Positions 53,655 through 64,000 of a stretch of DNA of 64,000 bases are shown here, in pieces. The DNA lies in the IMG/VR virus record IMGVR_UViG_3300035181_000471, positions 1 to 64,000 of that record, one strand, 5' to 3'. The position numbers and the translations under genes are program-made. Position 1 is the stretch's first letter; every line of letters starts with the position of its first letter. A model generated the notes under the pieces. It ran no database searches, was not told the DNA's origin, and worked only from the letters and a program-made list of their open reading frames with translations.

Positions 53655-53729
53655 TGGCGGGGGATGAGAGATTCGAACTCCCAGGCGTGGATTTGGAGTC
53701 CACTCGTTTAGCCATTAACGGAATCCCCC
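53655..53729 (-). tRNA. tRNA-Trp(CCA)
   Basis: Cloverleaf, loop CT CCA AA, G73, CCA. Confidence 0.9.
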
Positions 53730-53754
53730 GTAACTAAATAAGAATAACATGAAT

Positions 53755-53829
53755 TGGAGCCTAAGGAGGGAGTTGAACCCTCTTTCCATCCTTACCAAAG
53801 ATGTGTAATAGCCGTTATACTACAGAGGC
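53755..53829 (-). tRNA. tRNA-Thr(GGT), two acceptor mismatches
   Basis: Loop TT GGT AA; acceptor GCCTCTG/CTTAGGC. Confidence 0.8.
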
Positions 53830-53835
53830 ATTGAG

Positions 53836-53856
53836 GTGAGGGGACTGCCCCCTCAC
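53836..53856 (-). terminator. GC-rich hairpin after the Pth-like gene
   Basis: GTGAGGGG/CCCCTCAC. Confidence 0.5.
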
Positions 53857-53862
53857 TAGGGA

Positions 53863-54474
53863 TTACAGAAGTTCGAAGTTTCTGTGGTACCAGAAACCGT
53901 CTTGGAAAGTGTTCATAATGGCAACAGCGGTAATCTTGTTGTCCATGTCTGGCTCTCTCCAAATTGTTTTGTATTCGCCAGGACCAGTCTTCCCAGAGAG
54001 ATCTTTGCTACTGGCGTAAGGACTAGTGTCCTTTTTAGGAGTCATTAGGATGAGAGTCCCATTGGTCCAAGGAGCGAGTGGATGCTCCTTTTGAAACTGT
54101 GCGGCGGCGTGACTAGCCTGGACAACCTTTTGTGAGGTCGAGAGACTTGGATCGACAACGATGTAAAGCTTTTTGGCTCCAGGGTTGTTGAGGTAGGTCT
54201 TGAAGTGTTGAATCCCGGCCTGCATTGGGGCTAGAAGGGCCTTGTATTCTCTTTGCTTGCCTTCGGTATAGGGTAGGGTCTCACAAGGGCCTTTAGCCTT
54301 GTGTCCCGCTAATCCGCGAATCAGAGCGCGATGCTCACTGAGAGCGATATGGAGCATTCTGATTTCGGTTCTAAGGCCACCTTGCTTCTTGTGCTTTTCG
54401 ATAAGCAGTCTGAGCAAGAGTCTAGCGTTGAAGTAAGCTTCTTTTTGTTCCTGAGTGTAAGTGACATAAGCCAT
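53863..54474 (-). CDS. Pth2-like peptidyl-tRNA hydrolase with N-terminal extension
   Basis: KLYIVV...LS..Q...Q.SHA and WREPD....TAVA; start trimmed to MAYV. Confidence 0.72.
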   Translation of the reverse strand: MAYVTYTQEQKEAYFNARLLLRLLIEKHKKQGGLRTEIRMLHIALSEHRALIRGLAGHKAKGPCETLPYTEGKQREYKALLAPMQAGIQHFKTYLNNPGAKKLYIVVDPSLSTSQKVVQASHAAAQFQKEHPLAPWTNGTLILMTPKKDTSPYASSKDLSGKTGPGEYKTIWREPDMDNKITAVAIMNTFQDGFWYHRNFELL

Positions 54475-54551
54475 GTTTTTCTCCTTTAGAATGGTTGGCT
54501 GGTTTGTTAGCGGCAACTTCTAAGGATGGCTTATGGTGAGCGTGATGGCAC

Positions 54552-54575
54552 CTAGAGGTGATTTCTCCCGGTCAT
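54552..54575 (-). promoter_or_regulatory. uORF MTGRNHL-amber upstream of the Pth-like gene
   Basis: AAGGAG-N6-ATG, TAG stop; next in-frame stop TAA at 54531. Confidence 0.5.
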
Positions 54576-54602
54576 ATTATACTCCTTTATGGTTAAGTAA
54601 AA

Positions 54603-54680
54603 TGGTGCCCTCGGAGGAATTCGAATCCCCGATCAAGGTTTTAGAGACCCCAGCTTTAGGCCAGACTAAGCTACGAGGGC
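54603..54680 (-). tRNA. amber suppressor tRNA (anticodon CTA)
   Basis: Perfect acceptor GCCCTCG/CGAGGGC, A73, loop CT CTA AA, TTCGAAT, CCA. Confidence 0.88.
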
Positions 54681-54687
54681 TAGTAAC

Positions 54688-55050
54688 CTAGACTTCTGGG
54701 ATGATTAGAGGCTCAATCTGGCTTAGATCATTGGGAGTCAACTTGACATCACCAAAGGCGGCAAGAGGGAGTGGTTCGAAGGGGACTTCAATCTCAGTGG
54801 TTAGAAGCTCGGTCATTGCGGCGGTAAAACCAGGACCATCTTCAGGTGAAAAGACGAACTGGGTCTTGTCATCATTCAACACACCGTTGAACTTCTCAAT
54901 GAGCTTCTGTCTTTCCGTGTCGAAAGTAGCCATCTCAGCGATCAGCACCTTGGCTAAACGAGAGATCTGGTATGATGTCTTAGTAGGGAACACCTTGTCG
55001 TAAATGGTTGAACCTAGAATGGACTGAATTTCTTGAATCTTTAGCTTCAT
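54688..55050 (-). CDS. hypothetical phage protein (DUF1617-like)
   Basis: P.K.SY.ISRL.K....E...F..ER.KLI.K pattern. Confidence 0.6.
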   Translation of the reverse strand: MKLKIQEIQSILGSTIYDKVFPTKTSYQISRLAKVLIAEMATFDTERQKLIEKFNGVLNDDKTQFVFSPEDGPGFTAAMTELLTTEIEVPFEPLPLAAFGDVKLTPNDLSQIEPLIIPEV

Positions 55051-55075
55051 GTTAACTCCTAAAATATGATACTGC

Positions 55076-55573
55076 TTAAACTGGTCTTTCTGGTCTCATA
55101 CCTTTAAATTTCTCTGGGTATGTTTTCAAAAGGAATTTTCTGGTTTCGGCTTCTTGCTTAAGCGCGCTTTTTTCAAGAGTTCGATCTTTCCAAGGAAGGT
55201 CTTTCTCTTCGTCTACAATGGAGATAAATCTATCAACTCCAAAAACTATATATGCATCGAAGGCGTGGTCTAGTTCGTGAGCGATAATTGGTTCAAGTTT
55301 TTCACGCTTCAAATTGATCTCGTTCCAGTCGAAAGTAATCTCGGCTCTATCATGGAAAATGGCGGTCTGGGCTAGTGTGTTACCCTTTAAATCCCCGATC
55401 TTCCAAGTGATAGGCACGGGAATGGCCTTTAATCTGGCGTTATCAGCGGGTGATAGCTGAAGTAGAGTTTCTAAAGCGGTCTGAATTTGTTGCTGTGGAG
55501 TAGGCTGAGGCTTACAAGTCACTAAAAGAAGGACCGTAAGGGTCGCCAGACATAGCTTGCTGAGTGTGTGCAT
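55076..55573 (-). CDS. putative lipoprotein with HExxH motif
   Basis: LLVTC lipobox; IAHELDH...LE..A. Confidence 0.6.
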   Translation of the reverse strand: MHTLSKLCLATLTVLLLVTCKPQPTPQQQIQTALETLLQLSPADNARLKAIPVPITWKIGDLKGNTLAQTAIFHDRAEITFDWNEINLKREKLEPIIAHELDHAFDAYIVFGVDRFISIVDEEKDLPWKDRTLEKSALKQEAETRKFLLKTYPEKFKGMRPERPV

Positions 55574-55613
55574 ATGAGCCTCAACATAGAAATAGAAATT
55601 AGTTATTTTTTTT

Positions 55614-55699
55614 TGGCGGAAGCGATAGGAATTGAACCTACAACCCTGTTACGGGCGACAGTTTTCGAGACTGCTTGTCATGCCAGTGACCACGCTTCC
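55614..55699 (-). tRNA. tRNA-Ser(CGA)
   Basis: Loop CT CGA AA, long V arm, G73. Confidence 0.9.
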
Positions 55700-55705
55700 G
55701 TGATA

Positions 55706-55888
55706 TTGTGACTCCACCGGACACGGTATTTCGCGCCAACCTAGTCCGAATCGAACGGATTATAGCCCCGAAAAGCTCTTTGGTTCTCCCGTAAGGAGTC
55801 AAGGCGTGAATGGACTTAGGAGGTCTGAATCGCATCTTATAGCCGTCTGCTAAACTGCATCTATTCAGTTCGTTCGTTCAGGTCACAA
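55706..55888 (-). ncRNA. unknown structured RNA, about 183 nt
   Basis: Terminal TTGTGAC/GTCACAA helix, internal hairpins including TCCG-TTCGATT-CGGA; fills the tRNA spacer. Confidence 0.55.
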
Positions 55889-55890
55889 AT

Positions 55891-55964
55891 TGGAGCGGGA
55901 TAGGGGGCTTGAACCCCTGACACTAGCTCGGCAAGCTAAAGTTTTACCACTAAACTAATCCCGC
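55891..55964 (-). tRNA. tRNA-Gly(GCC)
   Basis: Loop TT GCC GA, U73. Confidence 0.9.
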
Positions 55965-55966
55965 AA

Positions 55967-56054
55967 TGGCGGAAGATAAGGGAATCGAACCCTTTAGGCT
56001 GTTATACCTTCACTTTAGCAAAGTGACGCACCTCTCCAACTGTGCCGATCTTCC
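55967..56054 (-). tRNA. tRNA-Ser(GCT)
   Basis: Loop TT GCT AA, long V arm. Confidence 0.9.
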
Positions 56055-56060
56055 ATGATT

Positions 56061-56138
56061 TGGTAATCCCAGCGGGATTTGAACCCGCATTCTCACCTTG
56101 AGAGGGTGGCGTCCTGGCCTGAGTTAGACGATGGGACT
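56061..56138 (-). tRNA. tRNA-Glu(CTC)
   Basis: Loop CT CTC AA. Confidence 0.88.
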
Positions 56139-56142
56139 GTCG

Positions 56143-56964
56143 TTACTGGTGTATCTTGTGTCGCCTATCATTAAAGGAGAACTCAATATACTCTACTTTC
56201 TGGTTACCAGTGAATTTAGTCTTGAATTGTTCAATATATTTATTAGCTTTGCCCTTTTTGACATATGCTATTGTAGTATGAGGCGCATAGTCAGGGAATG
56301 AATTGGCGTTATCTGGGTAGACTTCATTGCAATAATCGAATAAATCCTGGAGTTCTGGACTCTTTTCAACCTTTATAATGAGAACATCGTATGGTGCATC
56401 AGCGGGAGTGAACTGGCTTAAACCTAACCACTCAACCGACTTGACTTCTAGGCTTGGGTTGAACTTGTCTGGTGTTTGGTCCTTAATTCCGTAGAGACAA
56501 GTAATGTGGGGGTAGTCCTCTTTTCCCTTGATCTCTCCATCGGTGTAGACATCCTCTGGATCAACACTTTCAACGAACTCTAGAATTTTCTTAGTGACCT
56601 CTGGAGCGTAAGTCAACTGCACTGTGCTGTAGTCGTAAGCGGCTTGCTTTGTAAGGAGTCTGGCGAAAAAGGTTAGGAACCCCTTTTTACCACCTTGGCC
56701 GTAAGCTCTATCGTGATCGCCTTGAACACTAAGAATGAACAAAACTCCTTCATCAACCTTACACACGGCTCTTATTCCTTGGGATACTCGGATGGAAAGG
56801 AAGCCTGGGTTAGACTTAATTGGTTCTAAGTGGGTTCCTGCCCCATCTCTTAGCTGTTGTTCAGTGGCCTCAGTGACTTTAATCCTCAGAGCATCAAGAA
56901 GACGCTTTATATTCGGATTCTTTTTTGCCTGTTTAGTAGCGTCTTTTCCAAGTTCCATTTGCAT
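56143..56964 (-). CDS. RelE/HigB-like domain fused to a 2H phosphoesterase (Acb1/T4 57B-like)
   Basis: N: HLEP....GFLSIRV..GIRAV.......H..Y; C: PHITCLYG and FPDY.PHTTIAY. Confidence 0.8.
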   Translation of the reverse strand: MQMELGKDATKQAKKNPNIKRLLDALRIKVTEATEQQLRDGAGTHLEPIKSNPGFLSIRVSQGIRAVCKVDEGVLFILSVQGDHDRAYGQGGKKGFLTFFARLLTKQAAYDYSTVQLTYAPEVTKKILEFVESVDPEDVYTDGEIKGKEDYPHITCLYGIKDQTPDKFNPSLEVKSVEWLGLSQFTPADAPYDVLIIKVEKSPELQDLFDYCNEVYPDNANSFPDYAPHTTIAYVKKGKANKYIEQFKTKFTGNQKVEYIEFSFNDRRHKIHQ

Positions 56965-56975
56965 GTAAAGCCCTC

Positions 56976-57131
56976 TTATTCAGCGATGTAGCCAGCCTTG
57001 CGAAGAGCCTGCTTACCGCCAGCCTTGCGAAGAGCCTTGTAATCTTCGATTTCCTTGTTGTAACGAGCAACCTGCTCAGCGGTCAGAACGATCTCAGGCT
57101 CAGCGGTCTTCTTGTTCTTTTCGTTGGTCAT
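56976..57131 (-). CDS. small basic protein, 51 aa, with an ALRKAG duplication
   Basis: Promoter copy plus GGAGG RBS; 20-bp direct repeat. Confidence 0.65.
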   Translation of the reverse strand: MTNEKNKKTAEPEIVLTAEQVARYNKEIEDYKALRKAGGKQALRKAGYIAE

Positions 57132-57147
57132 GTGTCCCTCCACTATT

Positions 57148-57178
57148 ATTATACCAGAGTTAAGTTGATTCTCTTACT
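57148..57178 (-). promoter_or_regulatory. putative phage promoter (AGTAAGAGAA-N13-GGTATAAT)
   Basis: Copy of the recurring motif. Confidence 0.6.
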
Positions 57179-57190
57179 AGAATTGAGAAG

Positions 57191-57358
57191 TTATTTGTTC
57201 CTGTGGGTCTTTTTCTTTCTGACCCCATGCCTAGGTTTGCGGGAAGCATTTTCATTGCGATGCCACTTGCAGTAGGGGCAACTGGCTTCTAGTTCTTTAT
57301 GCCTTTTGGCCCAGACCGTAGAGTTTTCGGTAGTGTCTAGTTCATTTTTGGCTTTCAT
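57191..57358 (-). CDS. small basic Zn-finger-like protein, 55 aa
   Basis: AGGAG RBS; CPYC..H; K/R-rich tail. Confidence 0.6.
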   Translation of the reverse strand: MKAKNELDTTENSTVWAKRHKELEASCPYCKWHRNENASRKPRHGVRKKKTHRNK

Positions 57359-57374
57359 AAAGCTCCTGGAATAA

Positions 57375-57465
57375 TGGGTCCGTCCTAGGGGAGTCGAACC
57401 CCTTGTGCGTAAAATTACGCTGTGGTTTAAAAGACCACGGCCTGAACCGTGCGGCAAAGGACGGA
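57375..57465 (-). tRNA. atypical tRNA, anticodon TTT (Lys), long variable arm, 8-bp acceptor
   Basis: GTGGT-CT TTT AA-ACCAC; V arm GCGTAA/TTACGC; TCCGTCCT/AGGACGGA. Confidence 0.8.
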
Positions 57466-57486
57466 TAATGGTGCTATTTGTGTTTT

Positions 57487-57560
57487 TGGTAGCCACTTGC
57501 AGAATCGAACTGCAAACTCTTCCATGTCGAAGAAGCGGTATCCCACTTACCTAAGCGGCT
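57487..57560 (-). tRNA. tRNA-Val(GAC), C33
   Basis: Loop TC GAC AT. Confidence 0.8.
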
Positions 57561-57645
57561 ATTTTAATTCACTGGGTAGTTGCATTCACCCATCCGGTAG
57601 GGACACCTGTTTTCAAAATCCCGGCTTGTCAAGCTCCTTTAATAG

Positions 57646-57730
57646 TGGTGCGGATAGAGGGAGTCGAACCCCCATGCCGTTAGGCGCTGGCTTCTAAGAC
57701 CAGTTTGTCTACCAATTCCAACATACCCGC
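57646..57730 (-). tRNA. tRNA-Leu(TAG)
   Basis: Loop CT TAG AA, long V arm. Confidence 0.92.
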
Positions 57731-57736
57731 ATCGAA

Positions 57737-57811
57737 TGGAGCCTCTAAGGGGAATCGAACCCCTATCGTCTGATTACGAAACAGACATAATTGCCATTAT
57801 ACTACAGAGGC
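57737..57811 (-). tRNA. tRNA-Thr(CGT)
   Basis: Loop TT CGT AA; T31-T39 mismatch. Confidence 0.88.
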
Positions 57812-57841
57812 AAGAAGTAATTTAGTTGTCCAGTTAAATGT

Positions 57842-57917
57842 TGGTGTGACATGGGGGTTATGATCCCCCTCCGCGACTTTCACAGAGTCGTGTGCATCCG
57901 ATTACACCTATGTCACC
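57842..57917 (-). tRNA. tRNA-His(GTG) with non-canonical T loop
   Basis: Loop CT GTG AA; encoded G-1 opposite A73; T loop ATCATAA. Confidence 0.8.
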
Positions 57918-57959
57918 GTCTGGGGAATGAAGGACCACCTGTCCTAAATTCCGATTCTA

Positions 57960-58038
57960 TGGCGGTTCGTACGGGATTTGAACCCGTGATCTTTTGCGTG
58001 ACAGGCAAATGGGGACGGCCAGACTCCCCTAACGAACC
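57960..58038 (-). tRNA. tRNA-Asp(GTC)
   Basis: Loop CT GTC AC, G73. Confidence 0.9.
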
Positions 58039-58040
58039 AT

Positions 58041-58117
58041 TGGTACCCCCGGTAGGACTCAAACCTACATAATTCACCGTGTAAAGATGATGCCTAATCT
58101 CTCGGCGTCACAGGGGC
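58041..58117 (-). tRNA. tRNA-Val(TAC)
   Basis: Loop TT TAC AC. Confidence 0.85.
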
Positions 58118-58125
58118 ATTGATGT

Positions 58126-58201
58126 TGGAGCCGAATATCAGAATTGAACTGATCTCTCTGCGTTACAAGGGCAGAATAATTATCCACTATACTAATCCGG
58201 C
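58126..58201 (-). tRNA. tRNA-Thr(TGT)
   Basis: Loop CT TGT AA; C31-C39 mismatch. Confidence 0.85.
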
Positions 58202-58208
58202 ATGATAT

Positions 58209-58279
58209 TGGAAGGGCTGTAGGGAATCGAACCCTATCTGTTCGCTTCAAAGGCGAATCTGTCATCCTGTCTCAACCCT
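58209..58279 (-). tRNA. tRNA-Gln(TTG) with degenerate D arm
   Basis: TTCGC-CT TTG AA-GCGAA, good T arm, no clear D stem. Confidence 0.7.
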
Positions 58280-58280
58280 A

Positions 58281-58378
58281 TGGTTTCACACCTGAGCCGT
58301 CAAGCCCCAATCTCCCTAGCCCATCAAGCCGTATGGAAGACAATCGCTAGACTGATGAGATCCGTGCGATAGTGTGAA
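58281..58378 (-). ncRNA. CCA-ended tRNA-like RNA without an anticodon arm
   Basis: TTCACAC/GTGTGAA plus ACCA; nested helices ATCTC/GAGAT, CTAGC/GCTAG, CCAT/ATGG. Confidence 0.6.
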
Positions 58379-58460
58379 TGGCTCTCCATGTAGGAATCGA
58401 ACCTACTTAGCTTGCGCGACTGGTTAACAGCCAGTTACCGACCCGGACAGTATATGGAGA
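58379..58460 (-). tRNA. atypical tRNA-Asn(GTT) with extended variable arm
   Basis: ACTGG-CT GTT AA-CCAGT; V region with GC-GCAA-GC. Confidence 0.78.
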
Positions 58461-58525
58461 ATGAATTTCTTAGATAGTGGCCGTTGATCCACTTACGCTC
58501 TGTCGCTCAGTGCAGAGTATCTGTT

Positions 58526-58601
58526 TGGTGCCTCAGATGGGAGTCGAACCCACAACCAATAGAGTAAGAGTCTACTGCTCGACCAATTGAGCTTCTGAAG
58601 C
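58526..58601 (-). tRNA. tRNA-Lys(CTT)
   Basis: Loop CT CTT AC, conventional fold. Confidence 0.88.
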
Positions 58602-58671
58602 ATAAATACAGCACCCGGCACACTGGCTCTTTTACGCATACGCGACCTGTAGCCTGACGGTGTTGTGATTT

Positions 58672-58733
58672 TGGTGGATACAGTGGGTATTGAACCCACC
58701 TAGGGAGCTACCCTACTCGCCTTGAGTGTACCC
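58672..58733 (-). ncRNA. 62-nt mini-tRNA with Ala identity
   Basis: GGGTACA/TGTATCC (G3.U70), A73, CCA, T arm TTCAATA, 5-nt loop TAGCT. Confidence 0.7.
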
Positions 58734-58738
58734 ATGAT

Positions 58739-58825
58739 CGGTGATCCCAAGGGGAGTCGAACCCCTACAGTCGAGGACGCCTGGGTAAGAGCCAGGGGTG
58801 GTAGCCAGTTGCCACTATTGGGACC
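58739..58825 (-). tRNA. atypical tRNA, anticodon CTT (Lys), long V arm, foldable as 8/4, no encoded CCA
   Basis: CCTGG-CT CTT AC-CCAGG; V arm GTC/GAC; GGTCCCAA/TTGGGATC; ends ACCG. Confidence 0.75.
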
Positions 58826-58902
58826 GTAATTTGCGGCTCTAGGAACCCATCTTCCTAAATTTGATCCTGTCATGCAGGAACCGCCTATTTTTAAAGTTGC
58901 CA

Positions 58903-59259
58903 CTATTTCCAGAGTTTAAAGTTGGTAATTTCATCTTCCGCATTGGAAAGAGCATCCTCAAGGGAGGAGACTTCGGTTTCAAGATGAGAGATACGGCCTT
59001 CAAGAACTGAGAGAACTATTGCAAGACGCTCGGAAACCGTTCCATTCCAAATACCTGGAGTGTCGGGGAACATCCCACAGAGGGGGAGAATCAAGTCACT
59101 GCACTTGGTAAAGTCAGCGTAGACGGCATCTACTTCGTCCAGGGCGACCATTGCTTCCTTGGTGAAGAGTAGCATCTCGTTGGACTCAGGGTCAAAACGA
59201 GTGAGATCCTTGATGTTCTCATCAAGAGCTTCTCGGATCAGTGCAAGCTTTTCGGACAT
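58903..59259 (-). CDS. hypothetical protein
   Basis: Promoter copy plus GGAGG; start trimmed to MSEK. Confidence 0.65.
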   Translation of the reverse strand: MSEKLALIREALDENIKDLTRFDPESNEMLLFTKEAMVALDEVDAVYADFTKCSDLILPLCGMFPDTPGIWNGTVSERLAIVLSVLEGRISHLETEVSSLEDALSNAEDEITNFKLWK

Positions 59260-59275
59260 GAGTGCCTCCATAGTT

Positions 59276-59306
59276 ATTATACTCGGAAGCTTCGTGTTTT
59301 CTTACT
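59276..59306 (-). promoter_or_regulatory. putative phage promoter (AGTAAGAAAA-N13-AGTATAAT)
   Basis: Same boxes and spacing as the copy at 1555. Confidence 0.65.
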
Positions 59307-59313
59307 GTTTATT

Positions 59314-59387
59314 TGGTGGAGCCGGGGAGAATCGAACTCCCGATATCTGGATGCAAACCAGAGGTTATCCCTCTTAACTACGACCCC
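59314..59387 (-). tRNA. tRNA-Ala(TGC)
   Basis: Loop TT TGC AT, G3.U70. Confidence 0.9.
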
Positions 59388-59392
59388 AAAGC

Positions 59393-59473
59393 TAGACACA
59401 TTGTTGGCATTCTTTGAAGAGGAACACGCCAAGACTCTTGTTCAGGGGTTATGGGTTGCTGTTGATGTGTCTA
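59393..59473 (-). ncRNA. ACAGCAAC hairpin element, copy A
   Basis: TAGACACAT/ATGTGTCTA closing stem then CAACAGCAAC. Confidence 0.55.
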
Positions 59474-59499
59474 AGGGCTTAAGCACTACACTTAGGCTT

Positions 59500-59573
59500 T
59501 GGAGCGGGTTACGAGATTCGAACTCGTTTCGACAGCTTGGAAGGCTGAGGCACAACCCATATACCAAACCCGC
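59500..59573 (-). tRNA. tRNA-Gly(TCC)
   Basis: Loop CT TCC AA. Confidence 0.9.
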
Positions 59574-59583
59574 TTAGGCTACT

Positions 59584-60282
59584 TCACTTCTTAATACTCA
59601 ACTTATCAAGCTCTCGATGAAGAGCTTTCAACTTTTTTGCGACTGCTGGAGCTTCCTCTTCCATAGTGTGTTCATGCCACTCTTGGCTAGGACTACTGTG
59701 TGAGTTAGTATTAAGATCCCACCACTTCTCAAGCTCGTCGATTTTAGCTTTAATTTTTTCGATCTTGTCTTTTCGAACCTCAGGGAATTCTTGGAAGGTG
59801 ATGGCGTAATCGTCCTTGTCACCCACATAGGTTCTTCCAAAGTTTACCCAGTTCTCAACATTTCTGAGTTCTTTGTAGTGTTGACCCCAGATGTAGTCTA
59901 CACCCAGCTTCTCAGGGATGGATCTTAGTTGTCTTCCTGCTCCGTAAGCACGGTATTCAGGTAGAACAAAGATTGCAACACCTTTGATACCAGTCTTGTT
60001 TTCCAAGCCGTGGACGCCTAGCTCAACTAAATCAGAGGCGGGTTTCTTCTCTTTCTTCAAGAAGTAGCCACCAATAATCTGTCCATCAGCAAGCGCAACA
60101 TAACAATTACTGAAGTTATTGCCCATTTCTTCTTTGATTTCAGTCTTTACATCCTCTTCTGATAGCCCTAAGGACTCTTTAAAGGACTTAAAACAGACAT
60201 TTAAAGCTTCAGCTACTTCGCTACGCTTCATCTTTCTGATCTGGATATCAAAGGCTGTCTTGGTGAGTAAGGTGGAAATCAT
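59584..60282 (-). CDS. GNAT-family acetyltransferase
   Basis: YVA..DGQIIG, IFVLPEYRAYGAGRQL motif A; start trimmed to MISTLL. Confidence 0.82.
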   Translation of the reverse strand: MISTLLTKTAFDIQIRKMKRSEVAEALNVCFKSFKESLGLSEEDVKTEIKEEMGNNFSNCYVALADGQIIGGYFLKKEKKPASDLVELGVHGLENKTGIKGVAIFVLPEYRAYGAGRQLRSIPEKLGVDYIWGQHYKELRNVENWVNFGRTYVGDKDDYAITFQEFPEVRKDKIEKIKAKIDELEKWWDLNTNSHSSPSQEWHEHTMEEEAPAVAKKLKALHRELDKLSIKK

Positions 60283-60319
60283 TGTGTTCTCTCTATTGAG
60301 AAATAGAAAGTTAAAAGAT

Positions 60320-60396
60320 TGGTAGTCCCAACGGGATTCGAACCCGTGATAGCCACATTGAAAGTGTGGTGCCTTAAGCCGCTTGGCTATGAGACT
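60320..60396 (-). tRNA. tRNA-Glu(TTC)
   Basis: Loop CT TTC AA. Confidence 0.9.
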
Positions 60397-60405
60397 ACGA
60401 ATTTG

Positions 60406-60505
60406 ATCATCTGGATGGAGTCGAACCATCGGCCACCCGGAGTCCCCTGCAATTTGGTCCTTAACCGTGAGAGGTGGTGCGCTCTGACCGCTGAGCTACA
60501 AATGA
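60406..60505 (-). ncRNA. tRNA-like RNA with expanded anticodon domain
   Basis: Canonical acceptor, D and T arms; about 50 nt between D and T arms; no CCA. Confidence 0.65.
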
Positions 60506-60506
60506 T

Positions 60507-60586
60507 TGGTGTCCGTGGTCGGATTCGAACCGACAGTCACGACCTTCTGAGGATCGTTGCGTTGCCAGAGATTAGCATACACGGAC
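60507..60586 (-). tRNA. tRNA-Leu(CAG) with short variable loop
   Basis: Loop CT CAG AA; V loop TGACT. Confidence 0.85.
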
Positions 60587-60591
60587 ATGAT

Positions 60592-60665
60592 TGGCGAGAG
60601 TGCCAGGGGTCAAACCGGGGCCAAAGATTTTGGAGACCTTCATGCTATCGTAACACCTCACTCCC
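60592..60665 (-). tRNA. tRNA-Trp(CCA), second copy, irregular T arm
   Basis: Loop CT CCA AA; T loop TTTGACC. Confidence 0.72.
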
Positions 60666-60754
60666 ATGAGTAAATTTTGCAGAGTTATTGGCATATCTGC
60701 AACCTCCTTATGCAAAACCTACTGCGATCCCTACTGGGATTCTAGGTGGAGTAT

Positions 60755-60831
60755 TGGTCGGCCACAAGTGATTCGAACACTTGACCCCTTGCTCCCGAAG
60801 CAAGTGCGCTACCAGACTGCGCCAGTGGCCG
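60755..60831 (-). tRNA. tRNA-Pro(CGG)
   Basis: Loop TT CGG GA. Confidence 0.92.
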
Positions 60832-60841
60832 TTAATTTTAT

Positions 60842-60928
60842 TGGTCGGTGTGACAGGAATCGAACCTGCGTTTGTCCCTAATGGACCTAGCACCCCAAGC
60901 TAGTGGTCAACCATTGACCCACACACCG
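60842..60928 (-). tRNA. atypical tRNA-Pro(GGG) with long variable arm
   Basis: Loop TT GGG GT; V arm GTCC-ATTAG-GGAC. Confidence 0.85.
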
Positions 60929-60957
60929 AATTTCGTAACTCTGAATGAAATTTGAAT

Positions 60958-61032
60958 TGGTCGGGGTGAGAGGAATTGAACCTCCTACTACTCCCATCCA
61001 AAGAGAGGCGTCTACCGATGACTTACACCCCG
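60958..61032 (-). tRNA. tRNA-Pro(TGG)
   Basis: Loop TT TGG AT. Confidence 0.85.
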
Positions 61033-61144
61033 GTATTTTTAAGATGAATGGGGACTTTTTAGTCTTTGGATTAGTTTTAGACCATCCACATTCACAACAC
61101 ACTGGCCCATGTTTTTTAATGAGCAAAGTTCTTTCATAGTTCAA
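61033..61144 (-). pseudogene. truncated HNH-endonuclease remnant
   Basis: R..LI.KHG..C.ECGW...NP.T.K.P resembles the segment preceding an HNH core; the frame runs into tRNA-Pro. Confidence 0.55.
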
Positions 61145-61154
61145 CCTACTTTAT

Positions 61155-61229
61155 TGGTAGCCCTACCTGGGATCGAACCAGAATCTAACGATTATCGGTC
61201 GTTTGCACTAGCCATTGTGCTATAGGGCC
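61155..61229 (-). tRNA. tRNA-Ile(GAT), C33
   Basis: Loop CC GAT AA. Confidence 0.85.
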
Positions 61230-61278
61230 AATTTGGAGGCGGTCCCTCCAGCAAAGAGGGCGCTTATCCGGCGTTGGC

Positions 61279-61354
61279 TGGTGGAGCCATCGGGAGTTCA
61301 ACCCGATCCACTAGACTGCGAAACTAGTATGCCACGCCTCAACACTTTGGCCCC
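61279..61354 (-). tRNA. tRNA-Ala(CGC)
   Basis: Loop TT CGC AG, G3.U70, T31-T39 mismatch. Confidence 0.8.
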
Positions 61355-61356
61355 AT

Positions 61357-61432
61357 TGGAGCGTCTGACCGGACTTGAACCGGCTCCCTGAGTTTGGAAG
61401 ACTCTAGTGCTACCATTAAACACCACAGACGC
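61357..61432 (-). tRNA. tRNA-Gly(TCC), second copy
   Basis: Loop CT TCC AA. Confidence 0.88.
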
Positions 61433-61440
61433 ATTGAAAT

Positions 61441-61516
61441 TGGTGGATCTGACAGGGATCGAACCTGCCACCTACTGGATGCAAACCAGTCGCTCTCCCA
61501 AATGAGCTACAGACCC
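61441..61516 (-). tRNA. tRNA-Ala(TGC), second copy
   Basis: Loop TT TGC AT, G3.U70. Confidence 0.92.
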
Positions 61517-61531
61517 GTGTTTGTCTCTTAT

Positions 61532-61610
61532 TGGTGCAGGTAACGGGAGTCGAACCCGCAAAAACACAGCCTTCTCAGAACTGCCGCAATACCAAATAGC
61601 GTATACCTGC
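61532..61610 (-). tRNA. tRNA-Leu(GAG) with short variable loop
   Basis: Loop CT GAG AA; V loop TGTTTTT. Confidence 0.83.
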
Positions 61611-61617
61611 ATAGATA

Positions 61618-61696
61618 CAAGACTCTCTTTTTTCAAGGCAGGATTACCTGCGGCATCCCCATTAACAGGAGAATTTTGGTTGCTGTAAGAGTCTTG
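61618..61696 (-). ncRNA. ACAGCAAC hairpin element, copy B
   Basis: CAAGACTCT/AGAGTCTTG stem then TACAGCAAC; two inner hairpins. Confidence 0.6.
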
Positions 61697-61770
61697 GTGC
61701 CTTAGGTTGGAGTTGAACCAACCACACAAGGATTTTCAGTCCTTTGCTCTACCACCTGAGCTACTAAGGC
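61695..61770 (-). tRNA. tRNA-Phe(GAA)
   Basis: Loop CT GAA AA. Confidence 0.93.
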
Positions 61771-61848
61771 ATGATAAAAATTTGCGAGTGTGACTTACAT
61801 TGACTCCCAAGGTCACACAGACTGTAAGCCTACCTTTTTTCACAAAAT

Positions 61849-61927
61849 TGGTGGAGGATACCGGAATCGAACCGATTTCTATTCCTTTTCAGGGAATCGC
61901 TGGAATGACCACACTAGCTCACCCTCC
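61849..61927 (-). tRNA. tRNA-Phe(GAA), second copy
   Basis: Loop CT GAA AA; large D loop. Confidence 0.82.
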
Positions 61928-61944
61928 ATGATATTTAGATGAAT

Positions 61945-62029
61945 TGGTGGAACATGATGGGAATCGAACCCATAACCTCTGCACGGCATTGCGCCCAAAC
62001 AGTGTGCTTACCAAAGCCACTTCAGCCCC
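61945..62029 (-). ncRNA. tRNA-like RNA with Ala-type acceptor and elongated anticodon arm
   Basis: GGGGCTG acceptor with bulge, G3.U70, ACCA, good T arm; no 7-nt anticodon loop. Confidence 0.65.
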
Positions 62030-62035
62030 ATATAT

Positions 62036-62110
62036 TGGTGGAGCTACGGGGAGTCGAACCCCGAACTTTTGGATGCCGTCCAAATGTGTTCCCGCTAGCA
62101 CTATAGCCCC
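62036..62110 (-). tRNA. tRNA-Ala(GGC), C33
   Basis: Loop AC GGC AT, G3.U70. Confidence 0.85.
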
Positions 62111-62117
62111 ATGATGC

Positions 62118-62191
62118 TGGCTCCAAAAAGGGGAATCGAACCCCTGTCTCTGACTTAACAGGTCAGCATCCTACCATTGGATGATTTTGGA
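62118..62191 (-). tRNA. tRNA-Asn(GTT), conventional
   Basis: Loop CT GTT AA, G73. Confidence 0.9.
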
Positions 62192-62270
62192 ATAGTAAGG
62201 TCTCTCCCTTGTCAAGCCTGGATGATTAGCGGCTTTCCCTCCGAGGTTGGGTTGGACAGTGAATCGTTTT

Positions 62271-62981
62271 TTAGATTGCCTTCACTATCTCATTCGCCTG
62301 ATTTTTACAAACCCAGGTGTCCAACTTTTTAAGGACTAATTGTCCATGATCAAATTCCCAATGACAGTTGGGGCAAAGACCAACCAGATTATCGGGGGCA
62401 TTGATTTCTTTCAGTGTAGCGGAATCTGGGAAACTCATTACTGCTTGAATATGGCAGACCTCCACATGCTTACTATACCCACAATTAAAACAAGAATCGG
62501 TCTTGTGGCAAACACTAGCTATTCTTTGAGCGTGTTTTGTTATAACAGACCTAGCTCTCTGCCAATTAGTGCCACCGGATTCAGATTTCCCAAATAACTC
62601 TAACTTTGTTACATGGTCTCTTTTCCCTTTTAGGGGGTCTTTCTCTGCTTTAATCTTAACTACTTTTTCCTTTTTAGGTCTAAGTTTGTTATTGTAAGAG
62701 GCCGCGCAAGAGGTGGAACAGAAAATCCCGCTTTTAGTCTGAGATGGGACTCTGTGAAACTGCTTGGAACAGTTAAAACAAGAGACCTCTAATCGAGTTA
62801 TGTTATGATCGTGAAAGCATCGTTGGGAGCAGAATAATTTGATTTGCCCTCGTCTTTTCGATATAATTAAGTTGGCCTTAGATTGAGTGGTCTCTTTCCC
62901 ACACTGCTCACAAACTACAGGAATGCGATCTTTGTATTTCTTGTCCTTATATTCGATCAGCAGCGTTTCTAGTTGAGTCAT
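62271..62981 (-). CDS. HNH homing endonuclease with N-terminal Zn ribbons
   Basis: CxxC/FCSxxC repeats; C..CGY...EVCHI...N..NL..LCPNCH. Confidence 0.88.
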   Translation of the reverse strand: MTQLETLLIEYKDKKYKDRIPVVCEQCGKETTQSKANLIISKRRGQIKLFCSQRCFHDHNITRLEVSCFNCSKQFHRVPSQTKSGIFCSTSCAASYNNKLRPKKEKVVKIKAEKDPLKGKRDHVTKLELFGKSESGGTNWQRARSVITKHAQRIASVCHKTDSCFNCGYSKHVEVCHIQAVMSFPDSATLKEINAPDNLVGLCPNCHWEFDHGQLVLKKLDTWVCKNQANEIVKAI

Positions 62982-63020
62982 AATTTCTCCCTCTATAATC
63001 AAGAGTTAGAAAGTCGATTT

Positions 63021-63097
63021 TGGTTGCGGGAGGTGGAATCGAACCACGCTTTCACTATGAGCTTATGAGACTCTAGGCCAACCTCTGGCCCCGCTAT
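63021..63097 (-). tRNA. tRNA(CAT), initiator-like 1:72 mismatch, irregular
   Basis: Loop CT CAT AA; A1/A72; lacks the three GC pairs of initiators. Confidence 0.68.
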
Positions 63098-63105
63098 AAT
63101 TTTAT

Positions 63106-63180
63106 TGGTCCTCCAGGCAGGAATTGAACCCGCACTTCATGGTTCGAAGCCATGTGTTCTATCCGTTATACTACTGGAAG
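63106..63180 (-). tRNA. tRNA-Arg(TCG)
   Basis: Loop CT TCG AA. Confidence 0.88.
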
Positions 63181-63189
63181 ATAATTTCT

Positions 63190-63307
63190 CGGCCTTGGGG
63201 TTGTGGCCCCTCGCTTGCGTCTGACTCCCTGCCATCAGTCAGAACCGTGTATAGAGCCGCTAAGTCTTCCTACCTACTCCATACGGAGAGGGGCTCTCTT
63301 GTGCGGC
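63190..63307 (-). ncRNA. candidate structured RNA, about 120 nt
   Basis: On the + strand: GGGG/CCCC, TCTGACT/AGTCAGA, AGAGCC/GGCTCT enclosing CTCC-ATAC-GGAG. Confidence 0.45.
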
Positions 63308-63308
63308 A

Positions 63309-63396
63309 TGGCGGAAGATACAGGAATCGAACCTGCTTGCCTTTGACAGCCCATGCTTTCCAGGCATGTGTGACGCTCCTACTTCACCGATCTTCC
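63309..63396 (-). tRNA. tRNA-Ser(GGA)
   Basis: Loop CT GGA AA, long V arm. Confidence 0.9.
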
Positions 63397-63525
63397 ATTC
63401 TATACTAGATACTGAAAGTTTTTCAATATCGTTTGGTGGTAATTTTAGAATTATTTTTTGTAAACAACTCAGACCTTTGCTCTTATTATCGGGCGGTCCG
63501 GCGAGAACCAATCTTCGTCTTTATG

Positions 63526-63603
63526 TGGCGAGGCATAGGGGATTCGAACCCCTGATCTCTTCGTAGACAGCGAAGCGGGAACTCCGGACTTCCCCAATAC
63601 CCC
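63526..63603 (-). tRNA. tRNA-Asp(GTC), second copy
   Basis: Loop CT GTC TA, G73. Confidence 0.87.
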
Positions 63604-63611
63604 ATGATAAT

Positions 63612-63686
63612 TGGTGCCAACAAAGGGATTCGAACCCTTGACAAGAAGCTTATGAGACTTCCCCCTCACCTTTCGGGCTTGCTGGC
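63612..63686 (-). tRNA. tRNA(CAT), elongator Met or Ile2
   Basis: Loop CT CAT AA. Confidence 0.82.
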
Positions 63687-63745
63687 AAAGTGAGAGTTTT
63701 TAACTACCCAGTGGCTCTCACACTGGTCCTGGCCGTCCAAGTCAT

Positions 63746-63832
63746 TGGTACTCCTGACAGGATTCGAACCTGCGTTGGGCTTTCGCCGCACGGTTTCGTA
63801 GACCGTTACTAATCCATCTCAGTTACAGGAGC
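63746..63832 (-). tRNA. atypical tRNA-Arg(ACG) with long variable arm
   Basis: Loop CT ACG AA; V arm GGC-GAAA-GCC. Confidence 0.85.
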
Positions 63833-63840
63833 ATAGAATC

Positions 63841-63898
63841 AAGACTCGTCTTTTAGTTTCATCTTAAGTGAAAGGTTTTTAGTTGCTGTGAGAGTCTT
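63841..63898 (-). ncRNA. ACAGCAAC hairpin element, copy C
   Basis: AAGACTC/GAGTCTT stem, CACAGCAAC, inner TTTCA-CTTAAGA-TGAAA. Confidence 0.6.
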
Positions 63899-63992
63899 TG
63901 GTGACGCATGTAGGAATCGAACCTACTCAGGGCTTACTTGTGTGCCAACGGTTTTACAGACCGCCTCCGCTCTCCTACTCGGACGATGCGCC
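63899..63992 (-). tRNA. tRNA-Tyr(GTA)
   Basis: Loop CT GTA AA, long V arm, A73. Confidence 0.9.
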
Positions 63993-64000
63993 ATAGACGA

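What the first reader, a model, noticed from the sequence alone, without database searches (positions are those of the whole stretch)
60406..60505. tRNA body with the anticodon arm replaced by a larger structured domain
Seen: textbook TA-GCTC-AGCGGTCA-GAGC D arm and GATGG-TTCGACT-CCATC T arm, but a domain about 30 nt longer than normal between them with alternative pairings (CCACC/GGTGG, CCTCT/AGGGG); no CCA. Too short for a group I intron. Inference: a tRNA scaffold displaying an RNA module, or a tRNA with a short protein-spliced intron.
Basis: partly seen in the sequence, partly recalled or inferred. Interest (0 to 1): 0.6.

Follow-up and report, generated by a model that had tools for sequence, protein, structure and literature searches.

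The report
Anticodon-less tRNA-like gene in phage array
One of 43 tRNA genes clustered in a giant phage genome has a perfect tRNA body, but about 28 extra bases disrupt its anticodon arm, so it probably cannot decode and is most likely a decaying or non-decoding tRNA-like copy.

Summary
Window 60406-60505 (minus strand) scores as a tRNA (Rfam RF00005, 40.7 bits). It has a 7-bp acceptor stem and textbook D and T arms. Fifty nt lie between the D and T stems where 22-23 are normal, and there is no encoded CCA.

It sits in a 43-gene tRNA array of a jumbo phage (virus record of 221 kb or more).

The extra domain folds no better than shuffled sequence (z +0.15). Only the closing stem CCACC/GGUGG is robust. 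It matches no other Rfam family and I found no homologue anywhere.

No intron removal gives a canonical anticodon arm. There is no bulge-helix-bulge motif and no splicing endonuclease, although the phage does encode RNA ligases.

The 3' end reads CAA-AUU, one substitution from the array's usual CCA-AUU. Two diverged relatives keep the flanking tRNAs but lack this gene.

Most likely it is a non-decoding, probably decaying, array member that RNase P still cuts out as a tRNA-like RNA of about 100 nt.

Not excluded: a selected tRNA-scaffold RNA. Other phage arrays carry well-formed tRNA-like genes whose anticodon arms are capped hairpins, and Lak megaphages have "enigmatic" tRNA introns.

The parts
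60499..60505 (-). Acceptor stem, 5' strand (RNA positions 1-7, UCAUUUG). It starts 1 nt after the CCA of the upstream tRNA.
   Evidence: It forms 7 pairs with 60407-60413.
60481..60496 (-). D arm GCUC-AGCGGUCA-GAGC (positions 10-25), with A14, G18 G19 and A21 in place.
   Evidence: Rfam alignment; direct reading.
60478..60480 (-). Connector G26 C27 A28. This is 3 nt where a tRNA has 1, if the CCACC/GGUGG stem forms.
60473..60477 (-). 5' strand of the closing stem, CCACC (positions 29-33).
   Evidence: Pair probabilities 0.87-0.88; minimum-free-energy fold.
60438..60472 (-). Irregular 35-nt interior of the arm (positions 34-68). In order: bulge UCUCA, 3 bp, bulge UUA, 2 bp, tandem G.A/A.G, 2 bp, and a 9-nt loop AAAUUGCAG. 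It contains a 28-nt stretch (positions 39-66) followed by a repeat of its first three bases, CGG.
   Evidence: z-score +0.15 against shuffles. No other Rfam family. No repeat elsewhere in the genome.
60433..60437 (-). 3' strand of the closing stem, GGUGG (positions 69-73).
60431..60432 (-). Residual variable loop CC (positions 74-75). It would be UGGCC if G72 and G73 are unpaired, as Rfam aligns it.
60414..60430 (-). T arm GAUGG-UUCGACU-CCAUC (positions 76-92).
60406..60413 (-). Acceptor stem, 3' strand CAGAUGA (positions 93-99), and discriminator U (position 100).
60397..60405 (-). 3' spacer CAAAUUCGU. CAA-AUU stands where 41 of the 43 array genes have CCA and 7 have exactly CCA-AUU, so it is one substitution from an encoded CCA.
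   Evidence: table of 3' ends.
60507..60586 (-). Upstream neighbour: tRNA-Leu(CAG) with encoded CCA, found by Rfam only (47.7 bits).
60320..60396 (-). Downstream neighbour: tRNA-Glu(UUC) with encoded CCA.
53655..64000 (-). The tRNA array the gene belongs to. It holds 43 tRNA-like genes on the minus strand and runs to about 64.19 kb of the record, just past the window.

Best explanation
This is a tRNA-derived gene in the tRNA array of a jumbo phage. Its anticodon arm carries an insertion of about 28 nt. The gene is transcribed with its neighbours. Because the acceptor/T-arm half is intact, RNase P and 3' trimming should release it as a tRNA-like RNA of about 100 nt.

It has no 5-bp/7-nt anticodon stem-loop, and its arm is roughly twice the normal length, so it cannot decode on the ribosome. 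Most likely it is a degenerating array member (a pseudo-tRNA) that is dispensable and is being lost from related phages.

Shown: the tRNA fold, the array context, the missing anticodon loop and CCA, its absence from relatives, and the lack of special stability or homologues.
Inferred: co-transcription and RNase P processing, the inability to decode, and the 'decaying' status.
For: Fold and context:
- tRNA fold at 40.7 bits with all body elements.
- It lies 1 nt after the upstream tRNA's CCA and 9 nt before the next tRNA. No promoter-like or terminator-like site lies on its strand between 59.4 and 61.7 kb.

No usable anticodon arm:
- There is no canonical anticodon arm, and none after removing any 20-33 nt with a normal connector.

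No sign of a selected structure:
- The domain's energy equals that of shuffles (z +0.15).
- No other Rfam family matches.

Signs of relaxed selection:
- The 3' end is CAA-AUU, one substitution from the CCA-AUU used across the array. 41 of 43 genes keep CCA. The only other exception is a redundant second Lys(CUU) gene with CCG.

Dispensable in relatives:
- Two diverged relatives keep near-identical Pro and Glu tRNAs, and one of them (X5) also keeps Leu(CAG). Both join Leu(CAG) to Glu(UUC) by the same 7-nt spacer AUAUCAU, with no such gene.

No homologue:
- None in IMG/VR, JGI metagenomes, GTDB genomes or cultured phages.
Against: - The tRNA body is flawless: 7/7 acceptor pairs and all conserved D-loop and T-loop bases. 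A long-dead gene would not look like this, although a recent lesion would.
- The sequence is identical in contigs from at least four samples, so no decay is seen in progress. These are the same strain and carry no variation either way.
- Related and unrelated phage arrays hold tRNA-like genes with non-anticodon arms that are clearly maintained. An aberrant arm alone therefore does not mean junk.
- The direction of the presence/absence difference (gain or loss) could not be determined.
- A host CCA-adding enzyme could supply the missing CCA.
Confidence: 0.45

Rival explanations
1. It is a selected, non-decoding tRNA-like RNA, that is, a natural tRNA scaffold. The tRNA body secures RNase P processing and stability. 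The long arm is the working part or is irrelevant. The RNA could act as a decoy or sponge for host tRNA-targeting defence nucleases or toxins, or as a ligand of phage RNA-repair enzymes.
For: - Phage arrays recurrently carry tRNA-like genes whose anticodon arm is a capped or extended hairpin. Among 19 distinct genes sharing the D arm GCUC-AGAGAAA-GAGC there are 17 different acceptor stems; 18 of the 19 genes pair 7/7. Their arms are closed by UUCG, GCAA or GUAA tetraloops or GNNNA pentaloops, and 14 of 19 encode CCA.
- The nearest relatives found by terminase carry an 82-nt member with a 10-bp arm (z -4.0).
- The phage invests in RNA repair: an Rnl1-like ligase next to a cyclic-phosphate-processing cREC protein, further ligase-like ORFs, and a 2H/Acb1-like ORF inside the array.
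- The candidate's body is intact.
Against: - Unlike those genes, the candidate's arm is irregular and no more stable than shuffles.
- It lacks CCA.
- It has no homologue and is missing from the closest diverged relatives.
- No target or partner is known.
Confidence: 0.25
2. It is an intron-containing tRNA. The extra 26-30 nt are cut out by a host or phage endonuclease and the halves are rejoined by the phage's RNA ligase, giving a tRNA of about 72 nt. The best reading is an anticodon loop CUCUCAC (anticodon CUC), or UCUCACG after removing the CGG-flanked 28 nt.
For: - Huge phages are reported to carry tRNAs with 'enigmatic introns' (Lak megaphages, PMC6784885).
- The phage has the sealing half of a splicing pathway: an Rnl1-like ligase, a cREC cyclic-phosphate domain and a 2H-like ORF.
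- Removing the 28 nt leaves a perfect 5-bp/7-nt hairpin and a 72-nt molecule (direct reading).
Against: - I found no bulge-helix-bulge motif.
- No solution has the intron at 37/38 together with a workable variable loop.
- Every spliced model needs a 2-4 nt connector after the D stem and a 2-4 nt variable loop. The perfect hairpin has C33 and C37 in place of U33 and a purine at 37.
- 14.6% of shuffles give an equally good solution.
- The 221-kb record has no EndA, RtcB or CCA-adding enzyme. No protein-spliced tRNA intron is known in bacteria, as far as I know.
- The gene is absent from relatives.
Confidence: 0.15
3. It is a decoding tRNA of unusual build: a weak anticodon arm (ACC/GGU, 3 bp) followed by a giant variable region. 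This resembles ARAGORN's intron-mode call of tRNA-Val(CAC) with a 3-nt intron, and the many long-variable-arm tRNAs in this array.
For: - ARAGORN with introns allowed returns such a model.
- The array holds five class-I anticodons with long variable arms.
- A relative has a 100-nt tRNA(UAU) with a two-hairpin variable region.
Against: - These folds are 3.7-4.6 kcal/mol worse than the CCACC/GGUGG fold and break its five G-C-rich pairs.
- The anticodon stem would have only 3 pairs and a 6-nt or 9-nt loop without U33.
- Eight nt would be left single-stranded 3' of the variable arm.
Confidence: 0.05
4. It is an assembly artefact or a chance tRNA look-alike.
For: None beyond its uniqueness.
Against: - Identical sequence in independent assemblies from several samples.
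- Rfam E-value 1.6e-7 locally.
Confidence: 0.02

Closest known systems
Lak megaphage tRNAs with 'enigmatic introns' (Devoto et al. 2019, Nat Microbiol, PMC6784885)
   Same: An oversized tRNA gene in a huge-phage tRNA set that bacterial-mode tRNA finders cannot classify. The extra sequence lies in the anticodon region. No splicing mechanism is known.
   Different: The Lak introns were placed by eukaryote-mode tRNAscan and by alignment to intron-less copies, and they are conserved (often identical) across cohorts. Here no intron-less copy or homologue exists, no canonical excision works, and relatives lack the whole gene.
Archaeal/eukaryal intron-containing pre-tRNAs (bulge-helix-bulge, EndA/Sen endonuclease, RtcB or Trl1 ligase)
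   Same: A short insertion (tens of nt) that lengthens the anticodon arm, with no encoded CCA. The metagenome and genome hits with the same D arm include typical examples, such as one from a Woesearchaeota genome.
   Different: No bulge-helix-bulge motif, no 37/38 position and no endonuclease gene. The host is presumably bacterial, since 41 of 43 array genes encode CCA.
Phage-array tRNA-like genes with capped or extended 'anticodon' hairpins
   Same: An intact acceptor, D and T body inside a phage tRNA array, with an arm lacking a U33 7-nt loop and of variable length (16-33 nt).
   Different: Those arms are clean hairpins with stable loops, most genes encode CCA, their D loops lack G18 G19, and acceptor stems covary across many phages. 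The candidate has a normal D loop, an irregular 45-nt arm, no CCA and no relatives.
tRNA pseudogenes and degenerate duplicates in tRNA arrays
   Same: A disrupted anticodon arm, a mutated CCA, presence/absence variation between close genomes, and a neighbouring redundant Lys(CUU) copy that also has a mutated CCA.
   Different: The rest of the molecule shows no decay at all.
Engineered tRNA scaffolds for RNA expression, and phage T4 stable 'species 1/2' RNAs in its tRNA cluster (both recalled from memory, not tested)
   Same: The idea that a tRNA body gives processing and stability to a foreign or non-tRNA arm, and that small stable non-tRNA RNAs are encoded within a phage tRNA cluster.
   Different: There is no evidence here that the arm is a functional cargo. 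No sequence relation was tested.

Membership tests
tRNA (Rfam RF00005) | Score above the family's gathering threshold, with acceptor, D and T arms | tested here: met
   40.7 bits against 29, with model positions 1-71 matched.
tRNA (functional, decoding) | Anticodon arm of 5 bp plus a 7-nt loop with U33 and a purine at 37, one connector nt (position 26), and a variable loop of 4 nt or more | tested here: not met
   Rfam places 42 nt where 15 are expected. No such arm exists in the sequence as it stands or after any single excision with a 1-nt connector.
tRNA (this array's convention) | Encoded 3' CCA | tested here: not met
   CAA follows discriminator U; 41 of 43 array genes have CCA.
Archaeal/eukaryal-type intron-containing tRNA | Bulge-helix-bulge (or relaxed) motif at the exon-intron junctions; canonical 37/38 site | tested here: not met
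   The minimum-free-energy and suboptimal folds show one 3-nt bulge on the 5' strand only and no matching 3' bulge. A 37/38 intron would leave a 1-nt variable loop (direct reading). I did this by inspection, not with a dedicated motif program.
Archaeal/eukaryal-type intron-containing tRNA | Splicing endonuclease (PF01974) and RtcB ligase (PF01139) available | tested here: not met
   Neither is in the 221-kb record, while the control genomes match. The record is 77% complete and the host genome is unknown, so this is weak evidence.
Group I intron in a tRNA gene | Intron of well over 100 nt with a group I core | tested here: not met
   The insert is about 28 nt, and there is no Intron_gpI match at E <= 1.
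Class II tRNA (long variable arm) | Canonical anticodon arm followed by a variable stem-loop | tested here: not met
   The forced folds are 3.7-4.6 kcal/mol worse, with a 3-bp anticodon stem.
tRNA-Sec | 8/5 or 9/4 acceptor/T helices, 6-bp D stem, anticodon UCA in a U33 loop | tested here: not met
   It has a 7/5 arrangement, a 4-bp D stem and an 8-nt D loop.
tmRNA / YrlA (Y RNA-like) | A family model match | tested here: not met
   ARAGORN finds no tmRNA. YrlA scores 17.8 bits against a gathering score of 69, over the D-arm region only.
Lak-type phage tRNA with 'enigmatic intron' | Oversized tRNA in a huge-phage genome, unclassifiable in bacterial mode | tested here: met
   A phage record of 221 kb or more. 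Default ARAGORN does not call the gene. It is 100 nt long.
Lak-type phage tRNA with 'enigmatic intron' | Intron delimited by eukaryote-mode prediction or by an intron-less homologue, and conserved across genomes | tested here: not met
   ARAGORN in intron mode gives an implausible 3-nt intron. There is no homologue, and the gene is absent from relatives. tRNAscan-SE was not available.
Expressed, processed RNA | Detected as RNA with defined ends | not testable with these tools
   No RNA run holds the region.

The most novel reading that the evidence does not exclude
Phage tRNA arrays regularly include selected, non-decoding tRNA-like RNAs: a tRNA body whose anticodon arm has been swapped for another hairpin. 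These could serve as decoys or substrates in the conflict between host tRNA-cleaving defences and phage RNA-repair enzymes. On this reading the candidate is an extreme member, with a 45-nt arm and a 3' end that cannot be aminoacylated as encoded.
Probability: 0.2. Interest if true: 0.75.

Novelty: new member of a known kind. Interest (0 to 1): 0.4.

Why it matters
On its own this gene is a single, unconserved oddity and probably a decaying tRNA copy. It matters mainly as one more case of a poorly understood habit of large phages: carrying oversized or anticodon-less tRNA-like genes inside their tRNA arrays. Lak megaphage 'introns' are the only published example I found.

If such RNAs are functional, as decoys for anticodon nucleases or as substrates of phage ligases, they would add a new layer to the tRNA-centred arms race between phages and bacterial defence systems. 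They would also be natural counterparts of engineered tRNA scaffolds.

The set of tRNA-like genes with capped arms seen in passing is a better starting point for that question than this gene.

Tried and rejected
Searches for homologues (none found):
- IMG/VR exact or gapped patterns for the D arm plus T loop with a 40-60 nt gap, the insert core and the 5' half. A pattern from the upstream Leu(CAG) tRNA, meant to fetch homologous arrays in related phages, also found nothing.
- JGI metagenomes: the gapped pattern gave 10 unrelated oversized tRNAs.
- GTDB genomes: only a Woesearchaeota intron-containing tRNA.
- blastn against cultured phages: generic tRNA pieces only.
- blastn-short against the phage's own genome: no repeat of the insert. 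The D-arm-like 14-mer at 57074 lies in a small ORF and looks like chance.
- The last IMG/VR scan, for normal-sized tRNAs with the same D arm and T loop, gave a suppressor tRNA(CUA) and a tRNA-Met. The suppressor shares positions 4-26 almost exactly, but that is only a lead.

Relatives:
- Terminase relatives do not carry the gene.
- A search with the neighbouring GNAT-like protein found one 80% relative, whose contig lacks the gene.

RNA evidence:
- No RNA run holds the region, so expression, ends and splicing could not be tested.

Other ideas rejected:
- K-turn reading of the UUA bulge plus tandem G.A: two Watson-Crick pairs separate the bulge from the G.A pairs.
- Cys tRNA: Cys is the only amino acid missing from the array, the discriminator is U73, and GCA occurs in the terminal loop. 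However, GCA sits in a 9-nt loop at the tip of an arm of about 12 pairs (including a tandem G.A), with no 5-bp/7-nt context.
- Opal or amber recoding as a reason for an odd suppressor: coding density is the same under the standard code.

Spliced models were only enumerated locally as 17-nt arms, and the joined-sequence search step was left out.

Full report
**1. What is there**

On the minus strand, window 60505 to 60406 reads as a 100-nt tRNA-like gene. I number it 1-100, so the window coordinate is 60506 minus the position.

The elements are:
- Acceptor stem UCAUUUG/CAGAUGA (7 pairs, one G-U).
- U8 A9.
- D arm GCUC-AGCGGUCA-GAGC.
- T arm GAUGG-UUCGACU-CCAUC.
- Discriminator U.

Rfam's tRNA model matches exactly these coordinates at 40.7 bits (gathering score 29; E 3.7e-5 in the window, 1.6e-7 locally). 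It has to skip 42 nt where it expects 15 nt of the anticodon arm. ARAGORN in its default mode does not call the gene. After the discriminator come CAAAUUCG, so there is no CCA.

**2. Where it sits**

The window is the first 64 kb of a 221,217-bp IMG/VR virus record, estimated 77% complete. An identical neighbouring protein also occurs on a 286-kb contig.

The record encodes a DNA polymerase, portal, large terminase and helicase on the same strand, so it is a jumbo phage. Coding density is equally high under the standard code and under any stop-codon reassignment.

From 53.6 to 64.2 kb the minus strand carries 43 tRNA-like genes: 37 from ARAGORN, 5 more from Rfam, and this one. They cover every amino acid except Cys, plus an amber suppressor. 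A few ORFs are interspersed: an HNH endonuclease, a GNAT-like protein and a 2H/Acb1-like phosphoesterase.

The candidate starts 1 nt after the CCA of tRNA-Leu(CAG) and ends 9 nt before tRNA-Glu(UUC). No promoter-like or terminator-like site lies on its strand between 59.4 and 61.7 kb. Co-transcription and release by RNase P are inferred from this and from the intact acceptor/T half. They are not shown.

**3. The middle of the molecule**

Fifty nt lie between the D stem and the T stem, against 22-23 in a class-I tRNA.

- The dominant fold closes the region with CCACC(29-33)/GGUGG(69-73), with pair probability about 0.88.
It has probability about 0.075, and its best fold is 3 kcal/mol worse.
- Inside the closing stem the arm is irregular. 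In order: a 5-nt bulge UCUCA, three pairs, a 3-nt bulge, two pairs, a tandem G.A/A.G, two pairs, and a 9-nt loop AAAUUGCAG.
- Its energy is -11.9 kcal/mol, the same as dinucleotide shuffles (-12.3 +/- 2.6, z +0.15). The whole RNA gives z -0.13.
- Scanning the 271 nt around it against all Rfam families at E <= 1 gives only tRNA, a sub-threshold YrlA hit over the D-arm region, and an unrelated weak hit in the neighbouring tRNA.

So the word 'structured' in 'a larger structured domain' has no support beyond the closing stem.

With this stem, the connector after the D stem is 3 nt and the variable loop is 2 nt. The arm is therefore also shifted by 2 nt from where a tRNA's anticodon arm sits.

**4. 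Is it an intron?**

I enumerated every removal of 20-33 nt and asked for a 5-pair stem (one mismatch allowed) and a 7-nt loop with U33 and a purine at 37.

- With the normal single connector nucleotide there is no solution.
- With 2-4 connector nt and a 2-6 nt variable loop there are four related solutions. The loops are CUCUCAC or CUCACGN, and the 'intron' lies at positions 38-41 of tRNA numbering.
- 14.6% of shuffled middles do as well.
- An intron at the canonical 37/38 site would leave a 1-nt variable loop.
- Removing the 28 nt that are followed by a repeat of their first three bases (CGG) leaves a perfect CCACC-UCUCACG-GGUGG hairpin and a 72-nt molecule. That hairpin has C33 and C37 and keeps the 2-nt shift.

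The folds show no bulge-helix-bulge: there is one 3-nt bulge and no partner on the other strand.

The record has no splicing endonuclease, RtcB or CCA-adding enzyme, while control genomes match. It does encode the sealing side of such a pathway:
- An Rnl1-type ligase next to a cyclic-phosphate-processing cREC protein.
- A run of three ligase-like ORFs.
- The 2H-like ORF in the array.

These genes are ordinary for phages that repair cleaved tRNAs and do not by themselves indicate splicing.

**5. Signs of relaxed selection**

Forty-one of the 43 array genes encode CCA. Twenty of them continue CCA-AU and seven continue CCA-AUU. The candidate has CAA-AUU, one substitution away. The only other exception is the second, redundant Lys(CUU) gene, which has CCG-AUCAU.

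**6. Relatives**

- Contigs from other runs and samples carry the candidate without a single difference: X2, X3, JGI 3300036715, SRR11727740 and SRR11723144. This rules out an assembly error but gives no variation.
- A diverged relative in a wastewater run (X5) has the same Leu(CAG), with 4 differences in 163 nt, joined directly to Glu(UUC). The 107 nt that hold the candidate are replaced by four letters.
- A second relative (L033; its GNAT-like protein is 80% identical) has near-identical Pro(GGG), Pro(CGG) and Glu(UUC) but a different Leu(CAG). It has the same junction, CCA-AUAUCAU-AGUCUC, and again no candidate.

The difference is a replacement rather than a clean insertion or deletion. It fits cassette exchange between conserved tRNAs. 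I could not tell gain from loss.

**7. Homologues**

I found none. See the 'tried and rejected' section for the list of searches. The nearest normal-sized phage tRNA with the same D arm and T loop is a suppressor tRNA(CUA) that shares positions 4-26 almost exactly. Its anticodon loop is CUCUAAA, against CUCUCAC in the candidate's best loose model. This is a lead only.

**8. Analogues**

- The terminase relatives (71% identity; G001, G002) carry other oversized tRNAs. One is 100 nt, with a normal anticodon arm (UAU) and a two-hairpin variable region. Another is 82 nt, with an anticodon arm of 5 bp, a bulge and 5 more bp closed by a 6-nt loop (z -4.0), and with CCA.
- A pattern built on the 82-nt gene's unusual D arm (loop AGAGAAA, with no G18 G19) found 25 IMG/VR contigs and 19 distinct genes, inside phage tRNA arrays wherever neighbouring tRNAs were found. 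They have 17 different acceptor stems; 18 of the 19 genes pair 7/7. All T stems pair 5/5, and 14 of 19 encode CCA.
- In that set the 'anticodon arm' is a 16-33 nt hairpin. It is often six pairs closed by UUCG, GCAA, GUAA or a GNNNA pentaloop. Only two genes have a U33 7-nt loop.
- These genes are clearly maintained and mostly cannot decode. This keeps open the reading that the candidate is a selected tRNA-like RNA.
- The candidate differs from them in having a normal D loop, an irregular arm, no CCA and no relatives.

In the literature, Lak megaphages were reported to carry tRNAs with 'enigmatic introns'. The preprint version adds that these may be common in large phage genomes (PMC6784885 and its preprint). 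I found no later mechanistic work.

**9. Verdict**

| Reading | Probability |
|---|---|
| Non-decoding array member that is probably decaying, still released as a tRNA-like RNA | 0.45 |
| Selected tRNA-scaffold or decoy RNA | 0.25 |
| Spliced tRNA | 0.15 |
| Odd decoding tRNA with a giant variable region | 0.05 |
| Artefact | 0.02 |

It is a new member of a known but unexplained kind: aberrant or oversized tRNA genes in huge-phage arrays.

Noticed in passing
L040-L064 (IMG/VR contigs), e.g. L048:1615-1688, L050:2886-2963, L049:2778-2868, L014:1501-1582: A recurrent set of tRNA-like genes in phage tRNA arrays. The D arm is GCUC-AGAGAAA-GAGC (no G18 G19), acceptor and T stems covary (17 different acceptor stems; 18 of 19 genes pair 7/7), and most encode CCA. 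The 'anticodon arm' is a hairpin of variable length capped by UUCG, GCAA or GUAA tetraloops or GNNNA pentaloops, so most appear to have no anticodon. ARAGORN labels them ???, SeC(tca), Ile(aat) and so on.
   Followed up: partly
window 57378-57465, 58740-58825, 60845-60928, 63749-63832, 58382-58460; 61535-61610, 60510-60586: The class I/II rule is scrambled in this array. Lys(UUU), Lys(CUU), Pro(GGG), Arg(ACG) and Asn(GUU) genes carry long variable-arm hairpins (79-88 nt without CCA). Leu(GAG) and Leu(CAG) have short variable loops.
   Followed up: partly
L012:1501-1600 (G002; same in G001) and L026:1668-1761: tRNA(UAU) with a very long variable region occurs in two unrelated arrays. One has two hairpins of about 33 nt, the other a single long arm. 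The G002 copy has C33 in its anticodon loop.
   Followed up: no
window 54606-54680: An amber-suppressor tRNA(CUA) (ARAGORN labels it 'Pyl') in a phage whose coding density gives no sign of TAG, TGA or TAA reassignment.
   Followed up: partly
G000 70.4-71.5 kb (L038:1138-2608) and 94.6-97.0 kb (L039): RNA-repair genes outside the window. An Rnl1-type RNA ligase lies next to a cREC_REC (cyclic-phosphate-processing receiver) protein. Further on is a run of three ligase-like ORFs (PHA02142 OB-fold plus RNA_ligase, RNA_ligase, and the DNA_ligase_A_M family).
   Followed up: partly
window 56146-56964: An ORF inside the tRNA array with two H-x-T motifs and weak matches to Acb1 (anti-CBASS) and the 2'-5' RNA ligase superfamily, both below the Pfam cut-offs. 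It could be a cyclic-nucleotide or RNA-end phosphodiesterase.
   Followed up: no
window 58740-58825: The second Lys(CUU) gene has CCG in place of CCA. It is the only other array member without an encoded CCA, and it duplicates an anticodon already present.
   Followed up: no
window 60587-60760 against L033:490-615 and the X5 contig: Between the conserved Pro(CGG) and Glu(UUC) genes the content differs between related phages. L033 has a different Leu(CAG) gene, and the second Trp(CCA)-like gene is replaced. A piece resembling that gene appears in the opposite orientation in L033. An HNH endonuclease gene sits in the array (62274-63002) and another next to Pro(GGG) in L033, which suggests cassette exchange promoted by homing endonucleases.
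   Followed up: partly
window 53655-64000 and G000 to 64191: Cys is the only amino acid with no tRNA in the 43-gene array.
   Followed up: no
L028:1276-1369 and L026:315-439: Metagenome contigs with CCA-encoding (bacterial-style) tRNAs that carry insertions in the anticodon region. One is Ala(GGC) with 18 extra nt at 37/38. The other is a 125-nt 'Leu(GAG)' in a 14-gene array.
   Followed up: no
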